This document shows positions 11,042 to 40,546 of a DNA stretch of 64,000 bases, piece after piece. Made by a program: the position numbers and the translations under genes. The notes under the pieces were generated by a model. The model had not been told where the DNA came from. It made no database searches and saw only the letters and a list, made by a program, of their open reading frames with translations. Each line of letters opens with the position of its first letter. The stretch's first letter is position 1. The stretch is taken from positions 1-64,000 of the IMG/VR virus record IMGVR_UViG_3300044700_000691; one strand, given 5' to 3'.

Positions 11042-11094
11042 TAGGCTAGGGGTATAGGTTTACCTGCGCAGAGTAGGTACAGGGCTAGTGCAAT

Positions 11095-11492
11095 ACCTCC
11101 TGCTGGACCGGCTGGAGACCTGCCTGGAGCTGCTGGTCAGGCTAGCCCAGGAGGCTATATAATACCTACCCAGGACCGGTCTGGTACTGCTCCTGGCTGC
11201 CCTGGGGACCGTCCTGGCAGCTGTCTCCAGGTGACTCCTGGGGTACACCAGGACAGGTCCAGACTGCTCCTGGGTGACCCTGGGGAGCTGTCCAGGGGCT
11301 GCCCCGGGGCCTATCCCTGGTATAAGTTTTTGTAGCCAGGGGGAAGCAAGCATTTTTACTTTTTTCTCTTGTCTCCCCGGCTTGGCTAGTGGTCCAGACC
11401 TTTTTGCCTAGATTCATTTATCCAGGGGCTTTTCCTCGGGGCATTTCTACTGGTGGCGAATTTCCCCTGGCTTGGGGGCTGTTGTCCAGGTC
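11095..11492. repeat. GC-rich non-coding array of 17 CCWGG motifs at the strand switch
   Basis: CCWGG at 11123, 11147, 11170, 11192, 11201, 11213, 11227, 11237, 11248, 11269, 11279, 11292, 11316, 11336, 11422, 11466, 11486. Confidence 0.8.
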
Positions 11493-11500
11493 TTTTGCTA

Positions 11501-13187: not shown

Positions 13188-13253
13188 GCCTCACCACTCT
13201 TAACCCCAACCCCCTTGCGCGGGCGCACTCGGCGGGGTCCAGGAATACTGCAT

Positions 13254-13278
13254 AAAAAAAGAGGCTAGGCGCCTCTTT
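13254..13278. terminator. terminator between convergent genes
   Basis: AAAGAGGC/GCCTCTTT stem with an A run on the left. Confidence 0.65.
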
Positions 13279-13305
13279 AGTAATTTAAGATATAGGTGAG
13301 TCTAG

Positions 13306-13941: not shown

Positions 13942-13976
13942 CCTATAATAGATTTATTTGAGTTATTTATTTGCCA

Positions 13977-14255
13977 CTATTCAGTCTGATGATCATAGTA
14001 CTGACTAAACTGAATAAATGCTGGTGGATTGACCTCGTTTAGCCACTCGAGCGTAAATTCAGTACGGGCAATTGTAACATTGGCAATAAATAGTTCGGCA
14101 TGCAGCGAATCAATTAGGGCCTCGCGCTGTTCAATAAATTGCTTTTGTGCGGCGACTTGCCCAGCCAGTTTGCGGTTTGACACAATTGAGCTAACCGCAA
14201 TGGTTAAAAGTACTAACCCAGTTGCAACGGCGGCAACAATACTTGATTTTTTCAT
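13977..14255 (-). CDS. N-terminal TM/signal plus coiled-coil protein
   Basis: hydrophobic N-terminus. Confidence 0.7.
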   Translation of the reverse strand: MKKSSIVAAVATGLVLLTIAVSSIVSNRKLAGQVAAQKQFIEQREALIDSLHAELFIANVTIARTEFTLEWLNEVNPPAFIQFSQYYDHQTE

Positions 14256-26179: not shown

Positions 26180-26364
26180 TTTATGGGGTCTATGTAAAAC
26201 TTTTTATAGTCATAAAGATCCGCACACTTTTCATATTCTTCCCTGGATTCTAACCAGTGGATTACTTCATCTATTCTTGACCAGTATTTGGAATTATATC
26301 CATACTTATCAAGGTCCTTAAAGACCTTTTCCATTTCCTCATCGGACGTATTCTTCTTTACCAT
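26176..26364 (-). CDS. small protein with UVR-like motif
   Basis: LESREEYEKCADL. Confidence 0.7.
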   Translation of the reverse strand: MVKKNTSDEEMEKVFKDLDKYGYNSKYWSRIDEVIHWLESREEYEKCADLYDYKKFYIDPIK

Positions 26365-27316
26365 GCGAATATGAATATTTTGGCTGTACCTTTATAGTAT
26401 ATTTAACCTCAAGGTTAAGCAAAATATTCATGCACTCAACAAAGTCCGCTGTATGCAAATTCAAGACACTTTGATAATCGTCTTTACGATATCCTCCAAA
26501 TAGAGCGCAACTTACTGGAAGAGGCCTGCCTAACTTTTTATCCATGGATTTAACCCAATTCCAAAAAATTGTAGAGCACTCTAACCATTGTTCAGTTGAA
26601 CACTGAAATCCTAAATCATCCCATTCATGCGAGTCTGCACCATGACACCATACAACATATCCAATTTGGCCAGTTAAGATAGCCTCTTCTAATTTTTGTA
26701 GATTCCATTTAAGATTATTAATATATGAAGTACCTCTGCCAATTGGATTAATATTAAATTCAGAAGGAACAGCTTTATCTAAATCTTTAACAAATGCCCT
26801 AGCATCTTCAACCGAATTTCCAAAGTGTCCGTCTAGATCTAAATAAGCTCCGCTTAATCCAAACTCTTGTAGGATTTTAATTGATGCAATAACTTGACCA
26901 CTAAATGTACAGAAGCCGCTGCCTCCATCTGGTCGAGCATGGTGAAATCCGCTAGTTGGACTAAAATGAACCTGATCTGGTTCTACAATAGAACCCCGTA
27001 TTGCAGCGTGCAGTGATGCATTAGTATAGCGAACTGACTCTGCAAATTGAGTAGACCAGTCGAGTCCATTTGATTCACAGCCTTTTTGTCCACTAAAGAA
27101 TGAATTTACATATCTTTTAGTGTGGGCAATCTTAAAATCTTTATTTGTATATGGTGTAAAATCTTCAACAATATCAAAATGTTCGCCTAATCCCTCTGCC
27201 TCAAAATTTTCAAGTAACCTCTTTGGTTTTAGCGGAGACTTGCTAAAATTACCACCGGAGTCCTTTGCTAGGACCTGTTTAGGTGTGTAGTGTACTTTAA
27301 TTGTATTTTTTCTCAT
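26339..27316 (-). CDS. histone deacetylase family (HDAC/AcuC-like) amidohydrolase
   Basis: GFHHA...GFCTF, LDLDGHFGN, GADSH..D and GGY. Confidence 0.9.
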   Translation of the reverse strand: MRKNTIKVHYTPKQVLAKDSGGNFSKSPLKPKRLLENFEAEGLGEHFDIVEDFTPYTNKDFKIAHTKRYVNSFFSGQKGCESNGLDWSTQFAESVRYTNASLHAAIRGSIVEPDQVHFSPTSGFHHARPDGGSGFCTFSGQVIASIKILQEFGLSGAYLDLDGHFGNSVEDARAFVKDLDKAVPSEFNINPIGRGTSYINNLKWNLQKLEEAILTGQIGYVVWCHGADSHEWDDLGFQCSTEQWLECSTIFWNWVKSMDKKLGRPLPVSCALFGGYRKDDYQSVLNLHTADFVECMNILLNLEVKYTIKVQPKYSYSHGKEEYVR

Positions 27317-27522
27317 AATCCTTGTAATATAGTGATACCAGAAATGGCCGAGACCAATTGGTCTAGCCTTTCTATATCTAATAATACCAAAAGATCTGTA
27401 AAAATGGCACCTGGGTATTCGTATTCAATTAGACTCTCTAGCTGCTCCAGGGCTACTCTGGTGACTGCCAGGGACTCATTTGGAACCCGAATTAGGTAAC
27501 TAGTTGTCATCGTCCTCATCAT
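27313..27522 (-). CDS. hypothetical protein, 69 aa
   Basis: ORF in operon; contains a GC-rich CCWGG patch. Confidence 0.55.
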   Translation of the reverse strand: MMRTMTTSYLIRVPNESLAVTRVALEQLESLIEYEYPGAIFTDLLVLLDIERLDQLVSAISGITILQGL

Positions 27523-28237
27523 CTAAGAAATCATCTGGTGAGCCGATTTCTATTTCTTTACTAAGCTCTTCAATTTCATCAACATATTCCATTAATTCAG
27601 TAAATGAAAGCTTAGCTTCTTTATTTAGTTCGTCAATCATATATTCTTTTTCTTCTGGCGAACCGTACCTTGCAATTTCAAGCAAAAACCCAGAAATAAT
27701 ATCAAATAGGGTCCATCTGCGTTCAGCTTCAACTGCAATTTCATAAGTTTGATCGTTTGGAATATCTAGAGCAGTCTGTTCGCATATTACAAATTTACAT
27801 AGGTCCCTTAACATAATAAAATCTAGGTCAGTAATAACATCCGAGTCACTGCCTACTATTGTGCTAACTCCAAGTAGATTTGGAACAATATCTAAAATCG
27901 TCATATCCGAAGATGCCGTCATTCTGACTTTCCACGCCAATTCGATATAATCGAGCGCCGGTTGTTTAATTGAGGCCATATACGCCTCTTGTAAAAAAAG
28001 GTCAAAATCTACTTCATTAAGATAACCATTAAAAATTAAGTTAACTTCATCAGCAAAGTCTCCAATTATTAAAAGAAGATTGCTAACTGTAACGTCATTA
28101 TCAAATTCAGCAAAATTACCAAAATAGCTTGATAGTCTTCCAGTTATTCTGGTTTCTTTAATGGGCTGGCCAGTTTCTGGATCCCAATCAACTTGATAGA
28201 ATCCATCGGACTTTATTAAAATGCTCTTGTGTATCAC
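27500..28237 (-). CDS. hypothetical acidic protein, 245 aa
   Basis: long ORF. Confidence 0.8.
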   Translation of the reverse strand: MIHKSILIKSDGFYQVDWDPETGQPIKETRITGRLSSYFGNFAEFDNDVTVSNLLLIIGDFADEVNLIFNGYLNEVDFDLFLQEAYMASIKQPALDYIELAWKVRMTASSDMTILDIVPNLLGVSTIVGSDSDVITDLDFIMLRDLCKFVICEQTALDIPNDQTYEIAVEAERRWTLFDIISGFLLEIARYGSPEEKEYMIDELNKEAKLSFTELMEYVDEIEELSKEIEIGSPDDFLDDEDDDN

Positions 28238-28317
28238 AGGTACCGAATTTTTATTTTTTATACTCTAGAAAAATATTTTGAACCCAAATAAATATCTATA
28301 GAAATATTTAATAAACT

Positions 28318-30129
28318 ATGCACAAATCATTCCTGGACCTAGTACTAGAGTCTAATCAAGTCGAAGAAATGGCTCTACAGCCAGAACAGTTTCCAGATAA
28401 TTATCTAAAGAAGGCAAAGGACCGTCAAGCCCTTGCTAGAGAAATTGCGCCATTGGCTAAAAGCTTTCAAGAAGCTTTGGTTAATTTAAATTGGAGAGAA
28501 ATTACCTGGCAAACCAGAGGAAGCTCATTCTATCCACTGCTGCCTGCACCAATTATGGCAATCTATACTGAGGCTAAAGGTAAAATTACTGGAGGCGGCG
28601 ATTCATTTATTAGTAATTATATGAATAGTAATTTTGGTAAATGGGCTGATGCTAATAACCAAAGCGACTGTATTCATATGGAAGTAGACTCAAGCGGTCG
28701 TTCACACTTTCCAGGTGGAGGAATTCCAAGTTCGCTCAGAGGAGCTCGGCTTGGTTATAAATTGTATAGAGCCCTACTTGAACAAAAGAAATGGTTAAAA
28801 TCAAATACGGCTGGAACCCTAGAAAAAGATAATGCATGGGCATCTTTAATTTCTCCAAAATTAAATGCAGACGGATCCCTTAGTGAGGATGACGTACATG
28901 CAATTCTTGGACCAGACTGTGTATTTGCAATGATTAAAACAATCAGTAATGATCAAAAAATTAGATTTGCAACAAGTTTCCTAGATAATAATGTTAGCTA
29001 CAATAATGTAACTCCAAGAAATTTTGGAATTGATGATGAATTAAAAGCTATTTTACCAGCTGATGTAATGGCAAGGTTTGATCCAGCTGAAAGAGAAAGA
29101 TTAGAACGCGAACGTAGAGAAAGAGAAAATCTTGAAGCAGCTGAACGCGCAAGAGCATATGGCACTGAACGAGGAATTCAATGGGAAGCTCAACCAGAAA
29201 TTGGAGATATTGTTTATGTTAGACAATATGCAAACGGCAGAGATACCTCAATTCCAGTTAGGGTATTAGCCGGAGTTCTTAATAATACTGTAATTGCAAT
29301 TACAGTTCCAAATTATATTGATTGGGTTGAAAGAGGTAGCGAGGCAAGCCAACTTTCTTCTTTTGATACTAGAACCTGTAACAATAATCCTGAAGCAATT
29401 AAAGCTCAATTTGTTAAAGTAGATCCTGCACAAATCCCAGGAATCGAGGATGATTCAACTGTGATTAGAAGCAGATATAGTTCAACTGATTGGCGAATAG
29501 TTAAAGATTTTATTATAAACCTAATTGATCCAGAAGTTGCAGCTAGAATAAGAGCTGAACGTGAAGAAAGGGAACGTACTGAAAGAGAAGAGCGCGAAAG
29601 AATTGAAGCTGAACGTCAAATACAGCGTGCACAAAATGAAGAAAGATTTGGGCCAAGCGTAGAAACTTTCTTAGACGATCAATATAAAGCATCACTAGAA
29701 GGTCGTAGTCCAGGTGGAACATACGGTACCAAGCAACTTAAGCGTGGTCAAATGACAGATATTGCACTTTCACCAGATCAAATGGATAGATTTAATAGAA
29801 GAAAATCTACACCAGTATTTGCACCAGTTAGAACCAACTATTTAAATACAATCAATGGATATTCAATCGAAGAACCAATTGATGGATTAGGTCTTACAAG
29901 ATTCCGTTTAGAAAGATTTGATAGCAAGCGTGCAACTACACCAAACGAAATGCTCTATATTGCATCGCATAATACATATTATGGAATTGTTGCACCAGTT
30001 GACTATTATGTAGTTAACCGTGCTAGAAACGAAGAGTATATTTACTTAAGAGTTTTTGATAATACAAGCGGTCGTGCAAGAAAAATTGCAATTAGGGTTG
30101 CTGCACTACGTAAAATCGTTGCCTATTAA
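28318..30129 (+). CDS. putative capsid-internal multidomain protein with GNAT-like acetyltransferase domain
   Basis: leader MHKSFLDLVLE; IPSSLRGARLGYKLYRALL (GNAT motif A-like); two E/R-rich single-helix linkers. Confidence 0.7.
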   Translation: MHKSFLDLVLESNQVEEMALQPEQFPDNYLKKAKDRQALAREIAPLAKSFQEALVNLNWREITWQTRGSSFYPLLPAPIMAIYTEAKGKITGGGDSFISNYMNSNFGKWADANNQSDCIHMEVDSSGRSHFPGGGIPSSLRGARLGYKLYRALLEQKKWLKSNTAGTLEKDNAWASLISPKLNADGSLSEDDVHAILGPDCVFAMIKTISNDQKIRFATSFLDNNVSYNNVTPRNFGIDDELKAILPADVMARFDPAERERLERERRERENLEAAERARAYGTERGIQWEAQPEIGDIVYVRQYANGRDTSIPVRVLAGVLNNTVIAITVPNYIDWVERGSEASQLSSFDTRTCNNNPEAIKAQFVKVDPAQIPGIEDDSTVIRSRYSSTDWRIVKDFIINLIDPEVAARIRAEREERERTEREERERIEAERQIQRAQNEERFGPSVETFLDDQYKASLEGRSPGGTYGTKQLKRGQMTDIALSPDQMDRFNRRKSTPVFAPVRTNYLNTINGYSIEEPIDGLGLTRFRLERFDSKRATTPNEMLYIASHNTYYGIVAPVDYYVVNRARNEEYIYLRVFDNTSGRARKIAIRVAALRKIVAY

Positions 30130-30881
30130 TTAACAGGAAACATTTCGTAGAATTTATCAAGCCTTTCTAAGAATTTATTATAATACAATTTAAGATCCTC
30201 AGTATTCATTTCGAAATATTGAGGATCCATTGTTTGCTCGTTAGAGATCCAAATCTGTGCCTGAGAAATCTTAATTTTATATCTATCCCAAACCGCAACT
30301 GAGTACGCTGCAACTTGAAGTTTATAATCTTCAATCCACTCTTCCCTTTTTGGTTTACGTGAAGTTTTAAAATCAATTACCGCAAACGAACCATCAACTA
30401 ATTCTGAAACATTATCAACAGTTCCAGCATATCCGCCGTTTCTATGAGTCCACAGAAACTGTTCCTGCATTACAGTTTTCTTGATTCGGTCAAACGAACC
30501 TGATCTAATGTAATTATAGAACATCATTCCGCCAACAATCTTAGCACGATTATCCTGTTTGTCAATTTCCTCGTCTAATCGGGTAAGTCCCAATGTTTCC
30601 TCTAATCGAGTTTGAGTAGTCATTGAACCTGGAAGATTAAGATAAATTTCGCAAAGTCTGTGCATAATATTGCCACGGTCTAGTGCATTTTGACTTACTC
30701 GAGTTGCCTCAGCTTCGCCAACCCGTTCTTTCCATTTATCAATACCTGTAGTATCGGCAGTTGATCCTAAAATAGTCGTTACACTTGGAAATGGTCCCAA
30801 TTGACCATGTTCTTCAGAATTTACTTGGTAATATCTTTTATTGTTAAGCGTTACTCGCTTAATTGTGTCGTTAGTTTGCAT
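30126..30881 (-). CDS. PD-(D/E)XK exonuclease (RecB/Cas4-like phage family)
   Basis: PSVTTIL, RGNIMH, GYAGTVD, VIDFKTS, QVAAY. Confidence 0.85.
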   Translation of the reverse strand: MQTNDTIKRVTLNNKRYYQVNSEEHGQLGPFPSVTTILGSTADTTGIDKWKERVGEAEATRVSQNALDRGNIMHRLCEIYLNLPGSMTTQTRLEETLGLTRLDEEIDKQDNRAKIVGGMMFYNYIRSGSFDRIKKTVMQEQFLWTHRNGGYAGTVDNVSELVDGSFAVIDFKTSRKPKREEWIEDYKLQVAAYSVAVWDRYKIKISQAQIWISNEQTMDPQYFEMNTEDLKLYYNKFLERLDKFYEMFPVN

Positions 30882-31480
30882 CGTAGTTCTTCTATCTTGT
30901 CAATCATCCAATCGACGTTGACTGGTTTATAATCTGTTATACACGCACAAGCTGACATGGTTCCCGCTAATGGGTGGATGTGCCTGTGAGAGTGTCCATA
31001 TAGGTGGTATGCTCCACGATATTTGCCATTCCATTCATAAAGAGGATAGTGAAATAGCACAAATCTTTTAAAACCCCAATCGCTATCGTCTTTAATCATA
31101 ATTTCTTTGTAGTTTGTAAATTCTACAATATCCATTACTTCTCTTAAATTATAGAGCCAGGCTTGATCTATGTGAAGATCATGGTTACCAATAATCCAGT
31201 GGACTTTTCCAGGAAGTTTTCCAAATTTTCCTAGGTTTTCACGAATGTGTTTAAATTTAGTTCGCTCCATTGCAAGATCACCTAAGAAAAAAACGTGATC
31301 GTCTTCGCCTACTGTCTCATGCCAGTTTTTGGCAATGGTTTGGTCGTGCTCTTTAATATCAGCAAAGTTGTGTAATCCTTCTTCGAATCGTAAGACATTT
31401 CCATGTCCTATATGTAAATCGCTAATGAACCAAGTGGTGGCTCTGTCAAATGTGTTTTCTGCACTAAATATTTGTTCCAT
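30851..31480 (-). CDS. calcineurin-like metallophosphoesterase
   Basis: SDLHIGH, LGD, GNHD, HYP, GHSH. Confidence 0.9.
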   Translation of the reverse strand: MEQIFSAENTFDRATTWFISDLHIGHGNVLRFEEGLHNFADIKEHDQTIAKNWHETVGEDDHVFFLGDLAMERTKFKHIRENLGKFGKLPGKVHWIIGNHDLHIDQAWLYNLREVMDIVEFTNYKEIMIKDDSDWGFKRFVLFHYPLYEWNGKYRGAYHLYGHSHRHIHPLAGTMSACACITDYKPVNVDWMIDKIEELRCKLTTQLSE

Positions 31481-32540
31481 CTAATAGTTTATTACTAACA
31501 TACTCGAATGCAGTTTCAGCGTCTTGCATTACTTTATCTTTCTGTTGGTTAGCTAAATCAGTTAAGGCTTTATCGTATTTAGATGAAGTTCTGTGTTTAT
31601 GTAGTTTTTGTGCATAAATCTTAACAACCTCTTCTAAAAGTTCCTTTGAACTATTATACTTAAAATTTGGTAAATCATACGTGCCAGTTTTTTCAAGAGT
31701 TCTGGCAAATCCTAAGATTCCATTACAAATTTGTTCAAGTGAAAGTTGTGTTACATCAATTCCAGGATGTTCATTTAGGTAATCATCAATTACAAGTTCG
31801 CGTTTAGTTCCAGAGAATTCATCAACAAATTCAGCAAGATGTAAAATAAATTTAGAGAAATCTCTTGTGATAATCTTTTCCTCAACATCTTTACGCATAT
31901 TGGGTCCAACCAATTCTCCATTTTTAATTTTAGCAACAACTCCACGATCAGTAACAGATACGTCTAGCGCATTGCCAAAAGATTGATATAAAAATCCTAC
32001 TACAAAACCTTTAATTCCTCTAATTGGAGTATATCGAGCCTTTGCCCATTCGGCTGAATAGGTAAATGTTGGAATAATATCAACTTGAACTGGGCCTGCG
32101 CTTAGGTTAATTACAAGTTTTAGACTGCCATCTGAAATTGCATCGCTCTCCTCTGCATCAATTTCAGGTTGAGGATTTGCCTGAATCCACTTCAGCATAA
32201 GCTGATTGTATTCTTTCATGGTATCAATTTCAACTCGTCTTGATTGAGGTTCAGTTAATGGATATTCAACTAAAATGTCAACGTCGCCGTATGCTTTGTC
32301 TGGGTTCTCTTCTAAATCCTGTTTAAAATAAACGCCAGATCCACCTGGACCAAGTACTTTTAGCGGAGCCATATCCAATTTTTCTAGATGAGTATTAAAT
32401 TTACCAAAAATAAATTCCAATACTTTAACTGACTCCTGTAGAACAGTTGGTGTAATTTTAGTCCCCTGAGTTTTTGTTGTTGCCCAACCTCCCATTTCCT
32501 GTATTTTTAAAAATCCTGTAAAAGATTCAATGATTCTCAC
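31464..32540 (-). CDS. pol-beta superfamily nucleotidyltransferase-like protein with CTS-like leader
   Basis: GGSG...YGDVDILV...VQVDII; leader MRIIESFTGFLKIQE. Confidence 0.65.
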   Translation of the reverse strand: MRIIESFTGFLKIQEMGGWATTKTQGTKITPTVLQESVKVLEFIFGKFNTHLEKLDMAPLKVLGPGGSGVYFKQDLEENPDKAYGDVDILVEYPLTEPQSRRVEIDTMKEYNQLMLKWIQANPQPEIDAEESDAISDGSLKLVINLSAGPVQVDIIPTFTYSAEWAKARYTPIRGIKGFVVGFLYQSFGNALDVSVTDRGVVAKIKNGELVGPNMRKDVEEKIITRDFSKFILHLAEFVDEFSGTKRELVIDDYLNEHPGIDVTQLSLEQICNGILGFARTLEKTGTYDLPNFKYNSSKELLEEVVKIYAQKLHKHRTSSKYDKALTDLANQQKDKVMQDAETAFEYVSNKLLDGTNI

Positions 32541-32559
32541 TGCGATTAAGTAATTTTAG

Positions 32560-33117
32560 TTATTTATCGAAACCTAATTTCTTTAGCTCTGCAATAGTTT
32601 CCTTGGCACTAGTATGTAAAATGCCAGTTCCTCCAGCTGCAATCCATGCATCTAATTTCTTTGGAGTATCATCAATCAAGATATCGCTTGGGCCAGTTGC
32701 AAATTCAAATTTGTTACTATAAAAAATAGTCCTTTCTTTACCGGTCCAGTCCTCTAGTTTTGTAATATATGGAAAGTCCCAGTTTAGATTGCGCTTAAGC
32801 CATTTTGCTTTACCTGTAATTGAATTAGGATCAAGCGATGGTGAAGACAGGATAGTTGGGTTAAACTTTCGAATAAATGTCCAAAGGTCAATACCATCAG
32901 TCATCCATTCCATGCCGGCCCAAAATGGTTCGCCGGCTTTTCCAACCAGTTTCCAACTTGCATTTTTTGAATATTCCTTTTGAAATTCAGCTATTGTCAT
33001 TCCAGCCTCCTTTTCAAACTGAGAATCCCAATCTGAAAGTACTCCATCCATATCGCAAAATATTCGCGCTGTCTGGACACTCTCATTAAATTGTGTGTAT
33101 GGTTTAATGTGTTGCAT
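32560..33117 (-). CDS. HAD-family 5'(3')-deoxyribonucleotidase with CTS-like leader
   Basis: FCDMDGVL, ILSSP, K..W, ILIDD; leader MQHIKPYTQFNE. Confidence 0.85.
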   Translation of the reverse strand: MQHIKPYTQFNESVQTARIFCDMDGVLSDWDSQFEKEAGMTIAEFQKEYSKNASWKLVGKAGEPFWAGMEWMTDGIDLWTFIRKFNPTILSSPSLDPNSITGKAKWLKRNLNWDFPYITKLEDWTGKERTIFYSNKFEFATGPSDILIDDTPKKLDAWIAAGGTGILHTSAKETIAELKKLGFDK

Positions 33118-33124
33118 ATTATAT

Positions 33125-33925
33125 TTATTGTTGTAGGCTTGGTACCCAATGAGTAGTTCTGCCGTCTGCTGTTTTTTCTCTAATTACTGTATTTCCATGA
33201 GGATCTTCCCGTTTGCCATATACTTCAAATTCAAACACAAAGTCGCCAGTTTCGCCTGTCACCTGTTGATAGTTTCTAATACTTGCTCCACCTTGCTTAT
33301 AGGATGACCTACTTATTAGCTTAGCATAATCCCATAATAAAGAAACGTCATTATCAGTAAGGTCTCTAACTAATCTATGTGGGGAGATCTTTGTTCTGTA
33401 TAACATTTCGCATTTAATATAGTTTCCTATTCCTGCAAAAAGGCGCTGATCCATTAGTGCCTCAACTATAGTTTTGTTTGGAACCCGTTCAAACGATCTT
33501 ATTGTATCATACATAGTTGCACTTTGGTCATTGAGTGCATCAACCCCTAGGGTTTTTAATTTTGCATCCAATTCAACCTTAGTTGCAAATTTAAGCGTAC
33601 CAAATCGGCGCTGGTCAACAAAAAATAGCTCTAGGCCATCATCAAATACTAATTTAATATGAGAATGCGGCTTTTCATAGATTGACCAAAAGCCGCTCAT
33701 ACCTAGAGTAATCCAGATAGACATGCCCTCTTCTAATTCCAGCCAGATGAATTTACCCTTAACTCCGCCTCCAACTACCTCCAGGGGCAGCCCCAGGGTC
33801 TCCAGGCCGCTTGGGGGAGTCTTTAGGAAGCGCCCTCCAAGTATTTCTACGTTAACTAATTTTTTATTAATGCAGTGGTTTCTTAAACCTTCATATACTC
33901 GTCTGCACTCAGGTCCTTCTGGCAT
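33125..33925 (-). CDS. Fpg/Nei family DNA glycosylase/AP lyase
   Basis: N-terminal MPEGPE, KGK, DQRRFG, H2TH LMDQRLFAGIGNY, C-terminal GRTTHWVP without zinc-finger cysteines. Confidence 0.92.
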   Translation of the reverse strand: MPEGPECRRVYEGLRNHCINKKLVNVEILGGRFLKTPPSGLETLGLPLEVVGGGVKGKFIWLELEEGMSIWITLGMSGFWSIYEKPHSHIKLVFDDGLELFFVDQRRFGTLKFATKVELDAKLKTLGVDALNDQSATMYDTIRSFERVPNKTIVEALMDQRLFAGIGNYIKCEMLYRTKISPHRLVRDLTDNDVSLLWDYAKLISRSSYKQGGASIRNYQQVTGETGDFVFEFEVYGKREDPHGNTVIREKTADGRTTHWVPSLQQ

Positions 33926-33990
33926 AATTGTTGTTTTTAATATTATACCTATTTGCGCAAATAAATAACTGTAAAATAGATCTATTTAAA

Positions 33991-34413
33991 ATGATTTACA
34001 ATTTCAAAGATTTCGTTACTAAGGTTGACGAGAACGTAAACTCTAATGAGTTTTTAAACAAATTCGGTTTAACTGAAGAAGAAGATGCGGCAGAAGCTGA
34101 TGCTCCAGTTGAAGAAGAGCCAACTGAAGAAGCTCCTGAAGAAGGTGCTGATTTAGAAGCTTTCAAAAAAGAACACCTTGATGTAATGTTCAATGAACTT
34201 TCATCTGATGATTTCGATTCATTCTATTCTAGCGAATTCAAAGAGTGGAAAGAAATGGAAGATGGTGAAGAAAAGGAAGCTAAAAAAGAAGAGATTCTTA
34301 ATAAAATTAAGGATATGTTCCAATTAGGCGAAGAAGAGAAAGAAGAAGAAGCTCCTGAAGAAGGTGAAGAACCTGCTGAAGAACCAGCTGCTGAGGAAAC
34401 TCCAGAAGCATAA
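33991..34413 (+). CDS. extremely Glu-rich late protein, 140 aa (core/scaffold or DNA-mimic candidate)
   Basis: start moved to the ATG after the late promoter; leader MIYNFKDFVTKVDE; EEAPEEG repeats. Confidence 0.75.
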   Translation: MIYNFKDFVTKVDENVNSNEFLNKFGLTEEEDAAEADAPVEEEPTEEAPEEGADLEAFKKEHLDVMFNELSSDDFDSFYSSEFKEWKEMEDGEEKEAKKEEILNKIKDMFQLGEEEKEEEAPEEGEEPAEEPAAEETPEA

Positions 34414-34426
34414 TTAAATTTTTCCT

Positions 34427-34834
34427 ATGAAATCTCAACAAAAAGCAAAGCTTAAAGAAGAGGGTATCAAAATTGTTGAATTTGCAAAAGCAAATAAAAG
34501 TAAGTGGCGCTATATTCTATATGTAATAGGCGGCCTACTTGTTTTTTATGGATTAGTTTATGTTTTTACTCCAAAGCCACAAATGCCAGTAGAGTATAAA
34601 GCAATTATTGATTCGTTAACTGTTGCAAATAAAGAGTTAGAGGCAAAACAACTAAAAATCGATAGTTCAATTAAGGTTTATGAAACCGAAGTAAAGGCGA
34701 TTGATTTTCAGGTTGATAATATTAAAGAAAAGACTACAATTATTCGTGAATTTTATCATGAAAAAAGCGCAGCCGCTTCTACTTACAATTCAACCCAAAT
34801 TGATTCTTTCTTTAAAGCTAGATACAATTATTAA
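34427..34834 (+). CDS. TM-anchored coiled-coil protein (i-spanin-like candidate)
   Basis: single TM then coiled coil. Confidence 0.65.
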   Translation: MKSQQKAKLKEEGIKIVEFAKANKSKWRYILYVIGGLLVFYGLVYVFTPKPQMPVEYKAIIDSLTVANKELEAKQLKIDSSIKVYETEVKAIDFQVDNIKEKTTIIREFYHEKSAAASTYNSTQIDSFFKARYNY

Positions 34835-34835
34835 T

Positions 34836-35237
34836 ATGAAGAACTTACTTTTTATAATTGCACTATTTCCAGTTTTTGCATTTGCACAAACTGCACCACA
34901 AGATACAGTTAAAATTCCAGCACCTGTTGCAAAACAGATTGTTAAAGATTTAATTAGTGGTGATAGCGCAAAAGCTGAACTTACTCTTGTAAATAAACAA
35001 CTTTTTTTACTTAATCAAAAAATAGTATTAAAGGACAGTATTATTTCTGGACATGTTCAAAAGGGCAGTATGTACGAAGATCGTATTAAAAACGAGCAAT
35101 TGAAATTTGAAACTCAAGGATTATGGGTTAAAGATCTTCAAAAGCAAAATAAGAAACTTAAAACCAAATTAACATTTACTAAAGTTATTAGTGGAATATT
35201 AATTGGTAGCTTAGGATATCTCTACATTATGAAATAG
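34836..35237 (+). CDS. signal peptide + coiled coil + C-terminal TM protein (lysis accessory candidate)
   Basis: start moved to MKNLLFIIALFPVFAFAQ. Confidence 0.65.
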   Translation: MKNLLFIIALFPVFAFAQTAPQDTVKIPAPVAKQIVKDLISGDSAKAELTLVNKQLFLLNQKIVLKDSIISGHVQKGSMYEDRIKNEQLKFETQGLWVKDLQKQNKKLKTKLTFTKVISGILIGSLGYLYIMK

Positions 35238-35276
35238 TTTAACTGTAACAAATATTGAATAAATTTGTTACACAAT

Positions 35277-35313
35277 AAAAAAGGGACAGCTATTAGCCGT
35301 CCCTTTCTTTTTT
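35277..35313. terminator. bidirectional terminator
   Basis: AAAGGGAC-AGCT/AGCC-GTCCCTTT flanked by A and T runs. Confidence 0.75.
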
Positions 35314-35328
35314 ACATGAGGTATAAGA

Positions 35329-35526
35329 TTATTCGATAATTCCAAGAATCTTAGATTCTTGAACTGCTTCAACTGTCATTGCTGAAATTCCATCTCCAAA
35401 TCTAGCTCGGATTTTTGATTCTGCATCAGATACAGAGGTTGCACTTACGACATACAATTCTTTAATGAATTTACGTTTACCGCTTTCGGTTTCGGTCTCA
35501 AATTTGATTCTTACTAAATAATACAT
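35329..35526 (-). CDS. DUF4494-like protein (Bacteroidota family)
   Basis: RIKFETETESGKRKFIKELYVVSATSVSDAE. Confidence 0.7.
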   Translation of the reverse strand: MYYLVRIKFETETESGKRKFIKELYVVSATSVSDAESKIRARFGDGISAMTVEAVQESKILGIIE

Positions 35527-35549
35527 AGGTTTTTGATTTATAGGTTATT

Positions 35550-35765
35550 CTACTTTAACATTGATTTAAGTTCTGTTAAAACTTCCTCGTTTGTGCGACC
35601 GGCTCTGACCATTTCATACATTTTATCGAGCATATCTACAGATAGACTATCGCCCATTACTGCATCAATTTTTTTAATTGCAACAAACTCTCTAGGGCCA
35701 GTGCCAGTTTCAAGTCGTTCAATAAAATCAATAGGGTCTGGAATAAAATACTTGTTGAATCCCAT
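35550..35765 (-). CDS. hypothetical protein, 71 aa
   Basis: ORF in operon. Confidence 0.7.
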   Translation of the reverse strand: MGFNKYFIPDPIDFIERLETGTGPREFVAIKKIDAVMGDSLSVDMLDKMYEMVRAGRTNEEVLTELKSMLK

Positions 35766-35768
35766 GGT

Positions 35769-35984
35769 TTATGATTTAAGGTAATCGTATGTGCCTTTGA
35801 TATTGGCGTTTAGAAATTTACCAAATGATTCAGCTTCACACAACTCAGCATAGACTGATTCGGAAACTCCAACATAGGTATAGGTTGTGCCACTTTTAAA
35901 TTGAACGTAAAGTTCGTTTAGGGACTGGTCATATCCAAATGCATCAACAGTTGATGATGTTACTGAGGTTAATTCTACATTCAT
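35769..35984 (-). CDS. KTSC domain protein
   Basis: VTSSTV..FGYD....LYVQFKSG.TY.Y.GV....Y..L..AESFGKF. Confidence 0.9.
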   Translation of the reverse strand: MNVELTSVTSSTVDAFGYDQSLNELYVQFKSGTTYTYVGVSESVYAELCEAESFGKFLNANIKGTYDYLKS

Positions 35985-36010
35985 ATTAATAAGTTTATAG
36001 AGATAATATA

Positions 36011-36235
36011 CTAAGATTTCTTTGGTTTTTCCCTAAAGAATAAAAAATAAAGTCCAAAAAAGAATGCCGATAGGCAATAGAAAATAGCGTCCGTAATCCA
36101 GTATGAACCGGTCCATTTCATTACCAGAGCAAAGAGGGCATCGAATCCAAGAGGGTTGAAGAATGTAGCTAGGATCAGGATCCATGTCCCTATCAGGCTC
36201 TTCTGATTGTTTTTTAATTTGGTGAATACTGTCAC
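36011..36235 (-). CDS. small two-TM membrane protein
   Basis: hydrophobic FFNPLGFD...; GTG start. Confidence 0.6.
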   Translation of the reverse strand: MTVFTKLKNNQKSLIGTWILILATFFNPLGFDALFALVMKWTGSYWITDAIFYCLSAFFFGLYFLFFREKPKKS

Positions 36236-36317
36236 TTTCCATGGTATTAGATATTTTCTCAGTAGAGAAAAGGATTAATTGAATAAACTGAGGATTTGTA
36301 GAAATCTTAATTATTTA

Positions 36318-36551
36318 TTACCACTTAGGTTCTTCCAATGGACAGGCCTCGCCTTTAGTTGCAGTCTTTGCAAAAATATAGCAGCCGCACTCACCGCACT
36401 GACCACTTGCTCCTAGAAATTTGTCGCACTCATAACAAATAGAGAGCCTTTCATTTCTAATATCGTCGCCAACAAATAAATCATCAAAGATTCCTTTGAT
36501 TTTTGTTCGTACCTCGGTTGAGTTACAGTTCTTGCAATCGCTCATGATCAA
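36318..36551 (-). CDS. DUF6171-like Cys-rich zinc-binding protein
   Basis: RLSICYEC...CGECGC...ACP..PKW. Confidence 0.7.
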   Translation of the reverse strand: MIMSDCKNCNSTEVRTKIKGIFDDLFVGDDIRNERLSICYECDKFLGASGQCGECGCYIFAKTATKGEACPLEEPKW

Positions 36552-37482
36552 GTTGAATATAATTTTCTAATAAAGTATTATACTGCTCACGATATTTTAG
36601 AACAGCTAAGTCTTTGGCTTTTGCCTCGACCTCAATATCTAGAGTTAGGCCATATGGATTAATTTTTTCATAGATATAATCAGCATGGGATCTGGCAATA
36701 ACTGAAGAATCCTCGAATGTTTTCCTTGAACTTGAGTAGTGAGTTAGCGGCGTACATGACCAAGTTGAAGCTGCAAGTTTTAGTGCAGCCTCTTCAGTTA
36801 AGCCACTAGTATTAAATCGGTGATGGTGAAAATCAAAGGTGATTGGTGTACCAATTCTTGCAGTAATTAAGTCAAACAAGTCTTGTACTGAGTATTGAGT
36901 AGCCTTATCATCATTTTCAACCACAAGCCGGCTTTGCGCAGCTTTACTGAGTAACCTAAAATTTTGGCAAAATCTATCAGCTGCGGATTCTTTATCTCCA
37001 TATGTTCCACCTACATGGATATTAATAGGAAATCTATGATCGGTTGGTAAACCCATAAGATCCATAATTTCAGCGTGTTGGTTTAGATCCTTGATTGTTT
37101 TAGTAACAACACTTGGCGTTGGTGATGGTAAAACATCAAACTGACCTGGGTGCATTGATAACCTGATATTATTTGCAAGTACAAATTTGCCAATGGCCTG
37201 CATATCTGGTAAAATTTCTTGGAAATTAGGAAGCTCTTGAATTTCATATTCTGACATCCATGGAAAAACATCGCTAGACATACGATAAACGTAAATGCCA
37301 TTTGCAAGATTCCATTCCAAAATAGTTAAGATATCTTTGATATTTTGATGAGCCAACTCGCTGCAATATTGCACGCCCTTTTGTTGAAAGGTTTTTTTAA
37401 TCATTCCACGATTTGCAGTAACCTTTCTATCTAGTGACAAGTTAATGCAGCAATAGCCAAGGCGAGTTGTTTCGTTTATCAT
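36523..37482 (-). CDS. uvsE: UV damage endonuclease (UVDE)
   Basis: RLGYCCIN, YRMSSD.FP, RLSMHPGQF, LVVENDD, FDFHHH, HADY, EVEAKAKD. Confidence 0.93.
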   Translation of the reverse strand: MINETTRLGYCCINLSLDRKVTANRGMIKKTFQQKGVQYCSELAHQNIKDILTILEWNLANGIYVYRMSSDVFPWMSEYEIQELPNFQEILPDMQAIGKFVLANNIRLSMHPGQFDVLPSPTPSVVTKTIKDLNQHAEIMDLMGLPTDHRFPINIHVGGTYGDKESAADRFCQNFRLLSKAAQSRLVVENDDKATQYSVQDLFDLITARIGTPITFDFHHHRFNTSGLTEEAALKLAASTWSCTPLTHYSSSRKTFEDSSVIARSHADYIYEKINPYGLTLDIEVEAKAKDLAVLKYREQYNTLLENYIQLDHERLQEL

Positions 37483-37494
37483 AAAACTAATATA

Positions 37495-37713
37495 CTAAAT
37501 ACTATTCATTTTTGTGAGCTCTTCACACTTTTCAAATTCTTCCTTTTCTTCAAAATAGTCAATCATTTCAACTAAAAGGTCTGCTTTTTCTTTTTCATCA
37601 AATGGAATATCAGTTGGCCATGTAAAAGAATTTGCACTTAGGTGTTTGTACATTTCTTCCATCATGTCAAGGTACATGCTTTCTAAAGCTGCACTATAAT
37701 CAATAGTTCGCAT
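37495..37713 (-). CDS. small protein with UVR-like motif
   Basis: FEEKEEFEKCEEL. Confidence 0.7.
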   Translation of the reverse strand: MRTIDYSAALESMYLDMMEEMYKHLSANSFTWPTDIPFDEKEKADLLVEMIDYFEEKEEFEKCEELTKMNSI

Positions 37714-38323
37714 TCTGATAATTATTTGTGGCTTTACGGATTACCTCAACAACATCAATTGCATCATCTAATCCATCGTGCGTAACATGATTTTCAAGAC
37801 CAATGCGTTCTTTGCATTTTCCAAGACCAGGCAAAGCTTGATCGTTTTTCCAATCTGTAACCAATACAGCTGGATCAATAATACGATTTCTAATTTTAAT
37901 CTTAGTATTCCAAGTTGGAATTAGCGTCTCTAACCAAACTTTATCAAATGCTGCAAAGTTTTTACCCGCTGCATTAATAATTACTCTGTCACCATCTACT
38001 TCACAACCATTAAATGCTGCCCAATTTGCAAACGCAGTAGCAACCATTTGTGGAGTTAAGATATTGTGTTTTTTGCGATAATCTCCGCGCTCTTCTCTTG
38101 GAATCTTTTCCATGCCAGCAATTATCTTAATAAGGTTCATGTTCATATTAAAAGCATATGCTGAACCGCTATAGTGTGGATGTTCAATTACACAATTGAA
38201 AGTAGGCAACTCTGAGATTGGCTTAACATCATTTGTATCTTCAATTATTGCGCCAATCTGTAAGACCTGACAAGTCTGTGGATCTAATCCAGTTGTTTCT
38301 AAATCAATTGATATGTATTTCAT
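37700..38323 (-). CDS. DEDDh 3'-5' exonuclease (DnaQ-like)
   Basis: SIDLETTGL, GKNFAAFD, HDGLDDA. Confidence 0.88.
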   Translation of the reverse strand: MKYISIDLETTGLDPQTCQVLQIGAIIEDTNDVKPISELPTFNCVIEHPHYSGSAYAFNMNMNLIKIIAGMEKIPREERGDYRKKHNILTPQMVATAFANWAAFNGCEVDGDRVIINAAGKNFAAFDKVWLETLIPTWNTKIKIRNRIIDPAVLVTDWKNDQALPGLGKCKERIGLENHVTHDGLDDAIDVVEVIRKATNNYQNANY

Positions 38324-38347
38324 TTCTTTATATTTTATACTATTATA

Positions 38348-38758
38348 CTAATCTAAGATATCCCATGGCAAATCTCCGTCTTCAATCGGCGTAGATTTCT
38401 TTGGTGTATTCGGAGATGCTCCAAATAAGTCATTCATGATTTCATCGTCAGTCATGTCTTGCTCATCTAAAATTTGATTAGATTTTGCAATATGAATTTG
38501 AGTTGCTTCAATTGTATTGAAGTATTTGATTTGGCCGCTAGGACTTTCCCATTTACGACCGGCTAATTTATAGCCAACCTGAATTTGATCTCCAGGCTTT
38601 GCTGGATCCAGCATTTCGCATTTTTCTTGGATTGCAACAAAGGTTACATACTGTGGGTACTTATCGTTAGTCCCGACTACAAATTCTCTTTTTTTGAATT
38701 TGGCTGATACAAATTGAGTATCGTCTACGTTAATTAAGGTTCCGCTAAATGTTGACAT
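38348..38758 (-). CDS. DUF3127-family OB-fold protein (SSB-like)
   Basis: FKKREFVV...YPQYV.F...GRKW....YFNTI plus acidic tail DLPW. Confidence 0.8.
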   Translation of the reverse strand: MSTFSGTLINVDDTQFVSAKFKKREFVVGTNDKYPQYVTFVAIQEKCEMLDPAKPGDQIQVGYKLAGRKWESPSGQIKYFNTIEATQIHIAKSNQILDEQDMTDDEIMNDLFGASPNTPKKSTPIEDGDLPWDILD

Positions 38759-38759
38759 A

Positions 38760-39236
38760 TTAAAAGTTTGGGTTTGTTATTTTTAAATCATAATTATTAA
38801 AGTTTGCAAATAATTCTTTATCTGCTTGTAGTCGAGCATCGACTGTGTGACCTGGCATAACTCTTTCAGTAAGGCGTTGTCTGCGTGGATCTTCTGCGAT
38901 ATCAAAAAATATTACAAATGATTTTGCACGATCCTCTGGCGAAAGATGTGATAGACCACTCGGCGTCATAATAAAAACATCATCACGATAAAACTGTTCG
39001 ATCGTGGTGCCGTACGTCCAACCATTAAAATCAATTACTTCATAAAATTTACCGGAGTCAATCATTTGCTGACACTCAGTTTGACTTAAAAAGAAGTAAT
39101 CCTGGCCGTCTACTTCACCCGGTCTTGGTGGACGTGTTGTATAACTTACAGCATAAGTCATGCCTCTTTCCTCAAGGCGTTTTCTCATATAATCTTTACC
39201 TGATGCGCCAGGTCCCGCTAAAATAATTCTTGGCAT
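38760..39236 (-). CDS. gmk: guanylate kinase-like protein
   Basis: GPGASGKD, SYTTRPPRPGEVDGQDYFF, YGT. Confidence 0.85.
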   Translation of the reverse strand: MPRIILAGPGASGKDYMRKRLEERGMTYAVSYTTRPPRPGEVDGQDYFFLSQTECQQMIDSGKFYEVIDFNGWTYGTTIEQFYRDDVFIMTPSGLSHLSPEDRAKSFVIFFDIAEDPRRQRLTERVMPGHTVDARLQADKELFANFNNYDLKITNPNF

Positions 39237-40546
39237 TATATTGTTCTTGTTTTTTCGTAAATTGCTTTAATAACTGGAAATCTTAAAGAGTGCTGACCAT
39301 GTTGGTCGGTTGTTTCTTCAAAATATTGAACTGTAATTGTTTTACCAATAATTTGACTAGGGTTTTTGTAAAATTGTCGACGCTGTTCAATTGAAAAACC
39401 TGAACCTACTCTAACTTGATTTCCTCTATGCGTAATAAAAATATTACCTAGCATTTCTTCTTCGACTTCGCGACCATCTTCAATAACTCTATGAGTTGAA
39501 TTTTCAACTCCTTCTACAATGTATTCAGCATCCCAGAATTTTTTAACTTTAAGAATTTCATCACTGCGTTTTCCAATATATGGGGTATCTTTTCTTAACA
39601 TTAAGCCTTCCCAACCTTGAGCAGTTGAATTAGTAATTTCAGTTTGCAGGTGCTCCTCTGACTCTATTAGTGTCTGCTTTAGTAGAGTAGTATTTTTTAA
39701 GTCAATTCCACTAAACAGTAGAGCCGCAATTGTAATACGATCCCTAAATTTTCTGTCACTAGTTGAAGTTTGGCTATTAAACTCTTCTAGGGTTAAACAG
39801 TCAAATACTAAATATTTTGGATTTTTTATGGTATGGTTTTTTCGGCCAATTTCTTTAATAATTCCTTGAAAATCTTCTTGACCTGCATCATTCATCATGC
39901 AAACCTCGCCGTCAAGCACAGTATCTACTAAATTTAATTTTTTAATATCTGCCTTTAAGGTAGCTAGAGTTAGGAACTCATTACCACCTCTAGAAAAGAA
40001 CTTAACTTCTCCATCTGCATCAATTATTGCAGCACAGCGAACTCCATCTAATTTACGGCTCATGTACCAGTGATCTTCTAGCCTAACTTTCTTTTTAGTC
40101 CTATCATCATATGGCATGGCTAGTGCAACGTCAAAGGTTGGAATTGTTCCAGGTAAGATTGAATTAATTAAGGTCGTAGTTGCTCTAGTTTTTAGGTTGC
40201 GATCTAAGATACTATAGATCACTTCTGAGAACTCCAAATTCTTAGCTATAAAACCATTAACACAAGCTATTGCAGAGTTGCCAGTGACACGACGTTCATT
40301 CAGGTCGTTTAACAGACTAAATAGATCATCATAATTATCAAAAGAGAGCTCCTGTCTCTTTTTTAAGTTGGCCGGCGTAACATAATACTGCTTGAATGGA
40401 GAGTATGTATACTCTAGGATCTTTCTAAGATATGGGCTATTGAATTGTTGCAGGACTGCCTTTTTATCGTTGGTCGACGAAGTTACATTCATTGCCTCAA
40501 TAAAGTCCTGTATTGATTTGAGATTGTTCATATACATATTATACAA
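39236..40546 (-). CDS. ATP-dependent DNA ligase (start may be 40531)
   Basis: KLDGVR, LDGE, FD, EGLMLR, LKVK, SLRFP. Confidence 0.93.
   Translation of the reverse strand: MYNMYMNNLKSIQDFIEAMNVTSSTNDKKAVLQQFNSPYLRKILEYTYSPFKQYYVTPANLKKRQELSFDNYDDLFSLLNDLNERRVTGNSAIACVNGFIAKNLEFSEVIYSILDRNLKTRATTTLINSILPGTIPTFDVALAMPYDDRTKKKVRLEDHWYMSRKLDGVRCAAIIDADGEVKFFSRGGNEFLTLATLKADIKKLNLVDTVLDGEVCMMNDAGQEDFQGIIKEIGRKNHTIKNPKYLVFDCLTLEEFNSQTSTSDRKFRDRITIAALLFSGIDLKNTTLLKQTLIESEEHLQTEITNSTAQGWEGLMLRKDTPYIGKRSDEILKVKKFWDAEYIVEGVENSTHRVIEDGREVEEEMLGNIFITHRGNQVRVGSGFSIEQRRQFYKNPSQIIGKTITVQYFEETTDQHGQHSLRFPVIKAIYEKTRTI

What the first reader, a model, noticed from the sequence alone, without database searches (positions are those of the whole stretch)
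27405..33810. Satellite copies of the CCWGG element hidden inside coding sequence
Seen: TCCAGGGGCAGCCCCAGGG at 33780-33798 (inside the Fpg/Nei gene; CCAGG at 33781, 33793, 33802) matches 11291-11309 TCCAGGGGCTGCCCCGGGG at 17/19, with palindromic core GGGGC-W-GCCCC. A second patch at 27410-27472 has three CCWGG and similar CTGCTCCAGG/GGTGAC words. Both patches are locally GC-rich against the genome codon bias. Inference: DNA-level sites maintained through synonymous codons, i.e. secondary binding sites of the same factor spaced along the genome.
Basis: seen in the sequence. Interest (0 to 1): 0.6.

Follow-up and report, generated by a model that had tools for sequence, protein, structure and literature searches.

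The report
CCWGG mini-arrays inside two phage genes
Two short stretches inside genes of a 217-kb environmental phage are written in very rare codons that spell three CCWGG sites one DNA turn apart, like a conserved CCWGG-repeat element 16-22 kb away, and relatives keep them better than chance, so they probably act as nucleic-acid sites, though what reads them is unknown.

Summary
The window is the first 64 kb of a 216.8-kb jumbo-myophage contig with 36% GC.

- **Fpg/Nei patch (33779-33808, minus strand).** It is the most extreme rare-codon cluster in the genome and holds 3 CCWGG in 26 bp (0.007 expected).
- **Second patch (27442-27479).** It lies in a conserved 69-codon ORF. In most relatives it also holds 3 CCWGG, spaced 10-12 bp.
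- **Likeness to the main array.** Both patches are the two best matches in the genome to the intergenic CCWGG array at 11060-11500. The orthologous places are again the top two in relative G001.
- **The array itself.** It is a conserved non-coding element. Its core is 84-87% identical where flanking genes are 65-82%. The CC and GG positions are about four times more constant than W or non-site bases, and spacings run 9-14 or 20-24 bp.
- **Constraint on the patches.** Their rare codons persist better than rare codons elsewhere in the same genes.
- **Limits.** Each CCWGG site has been lost by a synonymous change in some relative. More distant phages have the array but not the patches. Only two patches exist. 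No binding factor or methyltransferase was found.

Verdict: real, array-like and weakly constrained nucleic-acid sites. The "same factor" reading is plausible but unproven.

The parts
33779..33808 (-). Fpg/Nei patch: codons 40-49, GGC CTG GAG ACC CTG GGG CTG CCC CTG GAG (GLETLGLPLE). It carries three CCWGG at 33781, 33793 and 33802, spaced 12 and 9 bp.
33125..33925 (-). Fpg/Nei-family DNA glycosylase gene (266 aa), host of patch 1. The peptide motif GLxxLxLP is family-wide, so only the codon choice is unusual.
27442..27479 (-). Patch 2: GAG TCC CTG GCA GTC ACC AGA GTA GCC CTG GAG CAG. CCWGG lies at 27447 and 27468. The degenerate TCTGG at 27457-27461 is a true CCWGG (AGG codon) in 7 of 8 relatives that have the ORF. 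That gives three sites spaced 10 and 11 bp.
27313..27522 (-). Conserved 69-codon ORF (ORF69), host of patch 2. It overlaps the stop of the upstream gene and the start (ATGA) of the HDAC-like gene, and is in frame in 8 relatives.
27410..27414 (.). It has AT-rich flanks, lies 37 bp from the patch and is lost in L100 and L101. It is probably an ordinary Pro-Gly codon pair and not part of the mini-array.
11060..11500 (.). Main CCWGG array: 17 sites here and 16-23 in relatives. It lies between the divergent 101-aa (-) and 141-aa (+) genes. It is the reference element of which the two patches are satellites.

Best explanation
The two patches are three-unit mini-copies of the repeat that builds the conserved intergenic array. 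That repeat is CCWGG plus a G-rich flank, recurring once per helical turn. The patches are written into coding sequence by rare GC-ending codons, in frames such as NNC CTG GNN and ACC AGG GTA, without disturbing the proteins.

They arose in the common ancestor of the clade holding this phage, G001 and L100-L102. Since then they have been kept by weak to moderate purifying selection acting on the nucleotides.

The most likely working is at the DNA level. A sequence-specific protein, phage or host, would read CCWGG with a degenerate centre and bind cooperatively to sites on one face of the helix. It would occupy the large array as its main site and the two three-site clusters 16 and 22.5 kb away as auxiliary sites.

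**Shown:** the patches exist, they are statistically anomalous, they resemble the array, they are orthologous in relatives, they have a reduced synonymous rate, and the array conserves the motif itself.

**Inferred:** that anything binds, that the same factor reads all three places, and what it does.
For: - **Codon anomaly.** Patch 1 is the top rare-codon cluster in the genome, and patch 2 is at the 0.09th percentile.
- **Clustering.** A CCWGG triple within 30 bp has p about 0.007.
- **Likeness to the array.** The patches are the two best genome-wide matches to the array, with the genome's own array and with a relative's as query. The orthologous places are again the top two in G001's 142 kb. 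Against a GC3-matched null, p is about 0.002 with the G001 core as query for both patches. With the window core it is 0.002 for Fpg and 0.025 for ORF69.
- **Spacing.** The patches have 9-12 bp spacing. The array's spacing is 9-14 or 20-24 bp.
- **Motif conservation in the array.** Minor-allele fractions are C1 2.1%, C2 4.8%, G4 0.5% and G5 3.7%. W is 10.6%, with A/T swaps at 5 of 19 sites. Non-site bases are 14.7%.
- **Array conservation.** The core is 84-87% identical where flanking genes are 65-82%.
- **Synonymous constraint in the patches.** Searches show this. Amino-acid replacements at codons 42, 43 and 45 leave the pentamers intact. A 47-column block of patch 2 has only 2 variable columns in 6 sequences.
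Against: - All three Fpg sites have each been lost through a synonymous change: GGC>GGT, CTG>CTA and CCC>CCT. Codon 44 flips at least 3 times on the tree.
- With 7 sequences, patch 2 ranks only in the 7th percentile of conservation.
- G004, G005 and G007 have the array but no patches, so the patches are dispensable.
- No DNA methyltransferase was found in the phage, and no DNA-binding neighbour was recognised.
- CTG46 is invariant although it lies outside any CCWGG.
- L100 keeps a hairpin instead of the motif.
- The tests use few, related sequences. They are not fully independent.
Confidence: 0.42

Rival explanations
1. The patches are decaying relics of a one-off mutational event, now neutral. 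A short stretch in each gene would have been overwritten in the clade ancestor. The source could be template switching or micro-conversion that used the CCWGG-rich array (or a GC-rich homologue) as template. The patches have no function and are being eroded by AT-biased mutation.
For: - The patches are lineage-specific. They are absent from G004, G005 and G007, which all have the array.
- Sites are lost by synonymous changes towards common codons in 7 of 18 Fpg sequences, in the window (patch 2), in L032 and in L100.
- Only two patches exist.
- With Leu fixed as CTG, three CCWGG in this peptide are not rare. My estimate from the codon context is about 1 in 8.
Against: - Alignments to the array reach only about 80% over 20-35 nt and need indels, so neither patch is a literal copy.
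- The peptide stayed in frame and typical of its family.
- Rare codons in the patches persist significantly better than rare codons elsewhere, the opposite of faster decay.
- AGG and the GCA/GTA codons in patch 2 do not fit a GC-rich donor.
Confidence: 0.25
2. The constraint acts on RNA. The patches would be local hairpins in the minus-strand mRNAs, such as processing or regulatory sites. Alternatively they would be pairing sites for a transcript made from the plus strand of the array, which would be antisense to both mRNAs.
For: - L100 changed both arms of patch 2. CCWGG is lost but an 8-bp stem GUCUCUGG/CCAGAGAC remains. L029-type sequences fold with z = -2.3 and L100 with z = -2.5.
- The array contains a sigma-70-like promoter (TGGTCA-18-TATAAT, 11134-11163, +) and two terminator-like hairpins on the plus strand.
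- The plus strand of the array folds at -94 kcal/mol with z = -4.1.
- All best patch-to-array alignments are in the same genomic orientation, while both genes are on the minus strand.
Against: - The Fpg patch shows no structure (z = 0 to +1.2) and its GGGGCUGCCCC palindrome is not conserved.
- Patch 2 in the window and in L101 folds no better than shuffles.
- Array fold z-scores are inconsistent across relatives and show no strand preference.
- RNAalifold finds little covariation, and two W swaps break predicted pairs.
- There is no Rfam match.
- Flank orientation is not asymmetric in the arrays.
- No expression data could be obtained.
Confidence: 0.17
3. The patches are translational pause sites. 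A cluster of rare codons would be selected to slow the ribosome for co-translational folding, and the CCWGG content would be incidental.
For: Patch 1 is the strongest rare-codon cluster in the genome, and its rare codons persist in the close clade.
Against: - This does not explain why both patches are the best matches to the array in two genomes.
- It does not explain the helical-turn spacing.
- Homologues in other clades have the same peptide motif but use common codons there.
- The observed losses go to common codons without apparent penalty.
Confidence: 0.08
4. The patches are chance local GC-rich fluctuations with no special origin or role.
For: The 17/19 match alone is at chance level. 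Triples of CCWGG within 65 bp are only marginally enriched, p = 0.06.
Against: Shuffle and GC3-matched nulls are exceeded. The patches also occupy the same two orthologous places in G001, L101 and L102.
Confidence: 0.03

Closest known systems
Clusters of short palindromic methylation or binding sites in helical phase. Examples are the GATC clusters of E. coli oriC read by SeqA, and the Dam-dependent hexamer clusters of the phage P1 pac site (from my own knowledge, not tested here).
   Same: There are many copies of a 4-5 bp palindrome one or two helical turns apart in a few hundred bp of non-coding DNA. The motif positions are conserved while the flanks drift. Small groups of 2-3 phased sites elsewhere can act as weaker sites.
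   Different: The motif here is CCWGG, not GATC. No methyltransferase was found in the phage and the host is unknown. No origin or pac signal was found at the array. No modification data exist.
Centromere or iteron arrays with about 11-bp units (plasmid R1 parC/ParR, tubC/TubR), and chromosomal parS sites that lie inside coding sequence, such as parS in B. subtilis spo0J (from my own knowledge).
   Same: The main site is a degenerate tandem array with a period of about 11 bp, next to a small conserved gene. The additional sites are embedded in genes by codon choice.
   Different: The syntenic 101-aa neighbour is a four-helix bundle with no ribbon-helix-helix or HTH match. No partition NTPase was looked for. 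The satellites are dispensable in related phages.
Auxiliary operators inside genes, such as lac O2 in lacZ and gal OI in galE (from my own knowledge).
   Same: These are weaker copies of a primary regulatory site, placed in coding sequence and maintained through synonymous codons. Patch 1 lies about 120 nt into the first gene of a leftward operon.
   Different: The distances to the primary site are 16 and 22.5 kb, far beyond classical looping range. No repressor is known.
Conserved rare-codon clusters (translational pauses).
   Same: Both are dense runs of the rarest codons that persist among close relatives.
   Different: The rarity here is tied to one DNA word shared with a non-coding element. 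It is not conserved in more distant homologues that have the same peptide.

Membership tests
Dcm/EcoRII-type CCWGG modification or restriction target | A cognate cytosine methyltransferase (C5 or N4) encoded with the sites | tested here: not met
   PF00145, PF01555 and PF02086 give no match in the 216.8-kb contig, which is 84% complete. A host enzyme cannot be excluded.
Dcm/EcoRII-type CCWGG modification or restriction target | Genome-wide avoidance or enrichment of the site | tested here: not met
   There are 241 sites outside the array against 229 +/- 7 in synonymous shuffles, so there is neither avoidance nor strong enrichment.
Phased protein-binding repeat array (iteron / centromere / SeqA-type cluster) | Repeated motif at about one helical turn, with the motif positions more conserved than the spacers | tested here: met
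   Spacings are 9-14 bp (109 cases) or 20-24 bp (42 cases) across 10 arrays. CC/GG minor-allele fractions are 0.5-4.8% against 14.7% for non-site bases. The satellites are spaced 12 and 9 bp, and 10 and 11 bp.
Phased protein-binding repeat array (iteron / centromere / SeqA-type cluster) | An identifiable DNA-binding protein for the repeat | tested here: inconclusive
   The flanking proteins have no Pfam DNA-binding domain. The 101-aa neighbour folds as a four-helix bundle (pLDDT 91) with no significant PDB match. Binding cannot be tested with these tools.
Replication origin or pac site | Coincidence with a GC-skew turning point or with genome termini | tested here: not met
   The cumulative GC-skew extremes of G000, G001 and G004 do not fall at the array. 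The termini are unknown because the contigs are linear fragments.
Structured non-coding RNA / mRNA hairpin | A conserved secondary structure supported by covariation, or a match to a known family | tested here: inconclusive
   There is no Rfam hit. The covariation term is -1.7 kcal/mol, with 7 of 117 pairs changed on both sides. Fold z-scores are inconsistent. One compensatory case exists in L100.
Conserved rare-codon (pause) cluster | Rare codons at the homologous position across the protein family | tested here: not met
   Clades with 58-64% identity keep the GLxxLxLP motif but use CTA, CTT, CTC or TTA, and have 0-1 CCWGG.
Auxiliary operator in coding sequence | Similarity to a primary site, and a distance that allows looping | tested here: inconclusive
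   The similarity is met. The distances of 16.2 and 22.5 kb are the same in G000 and G001 and are much larger than known loops.

The most novel reading that the evidence does not exclude
The 0.45-kb CCWGG array and its two in-gene mini-arrays are the cis-sites of an undescribed nucleoprotein or epigenetic system. The system would be conserved across a family of uncultured freshwater jumbo phages. A factor reading CCWGG in helical phase would nucleate on the array and also occupy secondary sites written into genes by rare codons. Possible roles are genome segregation, replication or packaging control, or a methylation-dependent switch.
Probability: 0.22. Interest if true: 0.75.

Novelty: new variant of a known kind. 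Interest (0 to 1): 0.5.

Why it matters
If the patches are real secondary sites, this is a clean natural case of a DNA-level code overlaid on protein code in a phage. Rare codons would be chosen and kept because they spell binding or modification sites. It would also point to an unknown factor and to a conserved non-coding element shared by a group of uncultured jumbo phages.

There are practical points as well. Extreme local rare-codon clusters can be used to find hidden cis-elements. Codon-optimising such genes for expression or engineering could remove function. If the patches turn out to be relics, they document how fragments resembling a repeat array can be seeded into genes.

Tried and rejected
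- **GenBank phages.** blastn found no relative of either region.
- **Rfam.** No match at gathering thresholds or at E <= 5.
- **Other CCWGG triples.** Those at 65371, 153190 and 160141/160189 are AT-flanked Pro-Gly protein repeats, not array-like.
- **Collagen-like pseudogene reading of the array.** Rejected. Gly is not at every third residue and the sites fall in all three frames.
- **Phage-encoded methyltransferases.** None found.
- **Neighbouring proteins as the binding factor.**
  - No DNA-binding domain was found. The only full Pfam hit is the Amidase_2 endolysin at 13306-13941.
  - The protein-atlas look-ups gave only "hypothetical protein" clusters.
  - The 101-aa protein model has no significant fold match.
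- **Origin of replication by GC skew.** No support.
- **Strand asymmetry of the flanks (CCWGGG against CCCWGG).** Absent in the arrays, so I dropped the orientation argument.
- **Literal gene conversion from the array.** Alignments are too short and gapped.
- **P0004-based locus search.** Found nothing.
- **Logan and ENA contigs.** They could not be extended to reach the array.
- **Sequencing runs.** No reads were laid, and I did not try to get them another way.


Full report
**Context**

The window is the first 64 kb of a single 216,815-bp contig with 35.9% GC. The contig encodes a large terminase, a T4-type baseplate wedge protein and a DNA ligase. IMG/VR holds it as a virus record that is 84% complete. 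It is therefore an uncultured jumbo myophage. Its relatives come from freshwater and "marine"-labelled metagenomes.

The finding spans a leftward DNA-repair and nucleotide-metabolism operon:
- Fpg/Nei glycosylase, 33125-33925 (-)
- a metallophosphoesterase
- a PD-(D/E)XK nuclease
- a 69-codon ORF, 27313-27522 (-)
- an HDAC-like gene, 26339-27316 (-)

**1. The observation**

*Patch 1.* It reads on the coding (minus) strand as codons 40-49 of Fpg/Nei: GGC CTG GAG ACC CTG GGG CTG CCC CTG GAG. CTG, CCC and GGG are each about 4% of their synonymous sets in this genome. In a 10-codon scan of all genes this is the most extreme window of 65,261, at -19.9 with sd 2.7. The runners-up are mostly wrong-frame ORFs or a tRNA-like stretch.

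*Patch 2.* It reads GAG TCC CTG GCA GTC ACC AGA GTA GCC CTG GAG and scores -11.2, the 0.09th percentile.

*Significance.*
- Three CCWGG within 30 bp occur once outside the main array, against 0.007 per synonymous-codon shuffle. Triples within 65 bp number 3 against 1.0 expected, p = 0.06.
- The 17/19 match by itself is not significant. There are two such matches genome-wide, and my own arithmetic expects about one.
- Both patches are the top two 40-nt windows of the whole genome for 7-mers shared with the array core.
  - This also holds when the array of a different phage (G001) is the query. They score 15 and 15, the next best scores 10, and no synonymous shuffle of 150 reached 15.
  - Against random GC3-only back-translations of the same peptides, p is about 0.002 with the G001 core for both patches. 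With the window core it is 0.002 for Fpg and 0.025 for ORF69.
- Other CCWGG triples in the genome are AT-flanked Pro-Gly repeats.
- No further phased pairs resemble the array.

So there are exactly two satellites.

**2. The reference element**

The array at 11060-11500 lies between a divergent 101-aa gene (-) and a 141-aa gene (+).

*Conservation.*
- I recovered nine relatives of the locus. All have a 470-540-bp spacer with 16-23 CCWGG.
- In a 10-sequence alignment the array core is 84-87% identical where the flanking genes are 65-82% identical.
- The C, C, G and G positions have minor-allele fractions of 0.5-4.8%. W has 10.6%, with A/T swaps at 5 of 19 sites. Non-site positions have 14.7%.
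- Spacings cluster at 9-14 and 20-24 bp.
- More distant complete genomes (G004 and G005, 271 kb, and G007) also carry one such array each, next to the 101-aa homologue.

This is the signature of a degenerate palindromic motif read in helical phase.

*The RNA reading is weaker.*
- There is no Rfam hit.
- The covariation term is small and some W swaps break predicted pairs.
- Fold z-scores vary from -0.9 to -4.9 without strand preference.
- Promoter-like and terminator-like sites do exist on the plus strand.

**3. The patches in relatives**

*Fpg.* The peptide GLxxLxLP is family-wide, so only the codons are special.
- All 18 distinct sequences of the close clade (88-99% aa identity) carry the patch. 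Eleven have three sites and seven have lost one or two, always through synonymous changes: GGC>GGT, CTG>CTA and CCC>CCT.
- Clades at 58-64% identity use common codons and have 0-1 CCWGG.
- The patch is nevertheless slower than its gene.
  - Rare majority codons inside it carry 1.5 synonymous alternatives among 18 sequences, against 7.0 for 16 rare codons elsewhere (Mann-Whitney p = 0.0009). Three of 6 are invariant, against 0 of 16 outside.
  - Fitch counts of third-position changes on a tree built without the patch are 9 per 10 codons, against 19.8 +/- 6.1. That is the lowest 3% of windows.
- Replacements at codons 42, 43 and 45 spare the pentamers.

*ORF69.*
- Of the eight relatives that have the ORF, seven have a true CCAGG (AGG codon) where the window has AGA. 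Six of those carry three CCWGG within 26 bp, and L032 has lost the third. L100 has lost two.
- Rare codons in the patch change less than elsewhere in the three-gene region: p = 0.06 for synonymous changes and 0.003 for any change.
- Overall diversity puts the patch only in the 7th percentile.
- The L100 version changed both arms so that an 8-bp hairpin remains. This hints at structure, or at a quasi-palindrome template-switch mutation.

*G001.* In its 142 kb the same two orthologous places are again the top two matches to its own array. In G004 there is no CCWGG satellite.

**4. Interpretation**

The data fit best with short, lineage-specific mini-arrays under weak to moderate nucleotide-level selection. 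They are most simply auxiliary sites for whatever reads the main array.

What limits the claim:
- Individual sites are lost.
- The patches are dispensable in array-bearing relatives.
- There are only two of them, both within 23 kb of the array. They are not spaced along the genome.
- No factor was found. The phage has no C5, N4/N6 or Dam-type methyltransferase.
- The neighbours have no DNA-binding domain.
- The syntenic 101-aa protein is a four-helix bundle without a fold match.
- GC skew gives no origin at the array.
- CCWGG is neither avoided nor broadly enriched, at 241 against 229 +/- 7.

The rivals are a neutral relic of a templated mutation, an RNA-level hairpin or antisense pairing, a translational pause, and chance. 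They are weighed in the report sections. None is excluded except chance.

**5. Comparison and novelty**

The closest known analogues are recalled from my own knowledge and were not tested here:
- phased clusters of short palindromes (oriC GATC/SeqA, P1 pac)
- 11-bp centromere iterons (parC/ParR)
- sites embedded in genes (parS in spo0J, lac O2)

I do not file this under any of them, because no binding protein or methylase was found, and no link to an origin or pac site. I found no description of a CCWGG array of this kind in one literature search. That search was narrow. I rate the finding as a new variant of a known kind of thing, namely cis-sites overlaid on coding sequence. Interest is moderate and rests mostly on the conserved array behind the patches.

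**Limits of this work**

- The sequences are few and related.
- The gene calls are my own crude ORF calls.

Noticed in passing
window 11060-11500; relatives L048, L091-L099; G004:160030-160330: The main CCWGG array is a conserved non-coding element across a whole group of jumbo phages. Its core is more conserved than the flanking genes. It always lies next to the 101-aa gene and occurs once per genome. The genes to the right of the 141-aa gene differ between relatives.
   Followed up: partly
L100:7840-7870 (orthologue of window 27442-27479): One relative lost two CCWGG sites of patch 2 but changed both arms so that a perfect 8-bp hairpin (GUCUCUGG/CCAGAGAC) remains. The cost is two amino-acid changes. 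This could be compensatory selection or a quasi-palindrome template-switch mutation.
   Followed up: partly
G004 and G005 (whole records): The control pattern GGWCC-N4-9-GGWCC-N4-9-GGWCC gives 7 matches per strand in G004 and G005, and none in G000, G001 or G007. These phages may hold a second kind of phased palindrome cluster.
   Followed up: no
G004:173414-173480: A GC-rich stretch shares 15 7-mers with the non-CCWGG half of G004's own array region (ccggtac/ggaccgg words). It may be a different kind of satellite in the distant clade.
   Followed up: no
window 11000-14000: This is an island of 45-46% GC in a 36% GC genome. It holds the array, three small genes without close relatives (one with a CxxC...CxxC motif, 11962-12612) and an Amidase_2 endolysin (13306-13941, -). 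Small membrane-protein genes lie nearby, so this is probably the lysis region.
   Followed up: partly
window 26339-40546: The phage carries an unusual DNA-repair and metabolism set. It comprises Fpg/Nei glycosylase, a PD-(D/E)XK nuclease, a calcineurin-like phosphoesterase, a histone-deacetylase-family protein and an ATP-dependent DNA ligase (39236-40546).
   Followed up: partly
G000:216495-216524 (outside the window): A stretch reading GGTCGTCAGTTCGAGTCTGGCCCCCGC looks like a tRNA T-arm near the contig end. It appeared as a false rare-codon outlier in a spurious ORF.
   Followed up: no
L029-L033, orthologue of window about 27520-27540: Five relatives have an extra CCTGG (GAC CTC CTG GAC) in the acidic C-terminal tail of the upstream gene. 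The window has TTC TTA GAT there.
   Followed up: no
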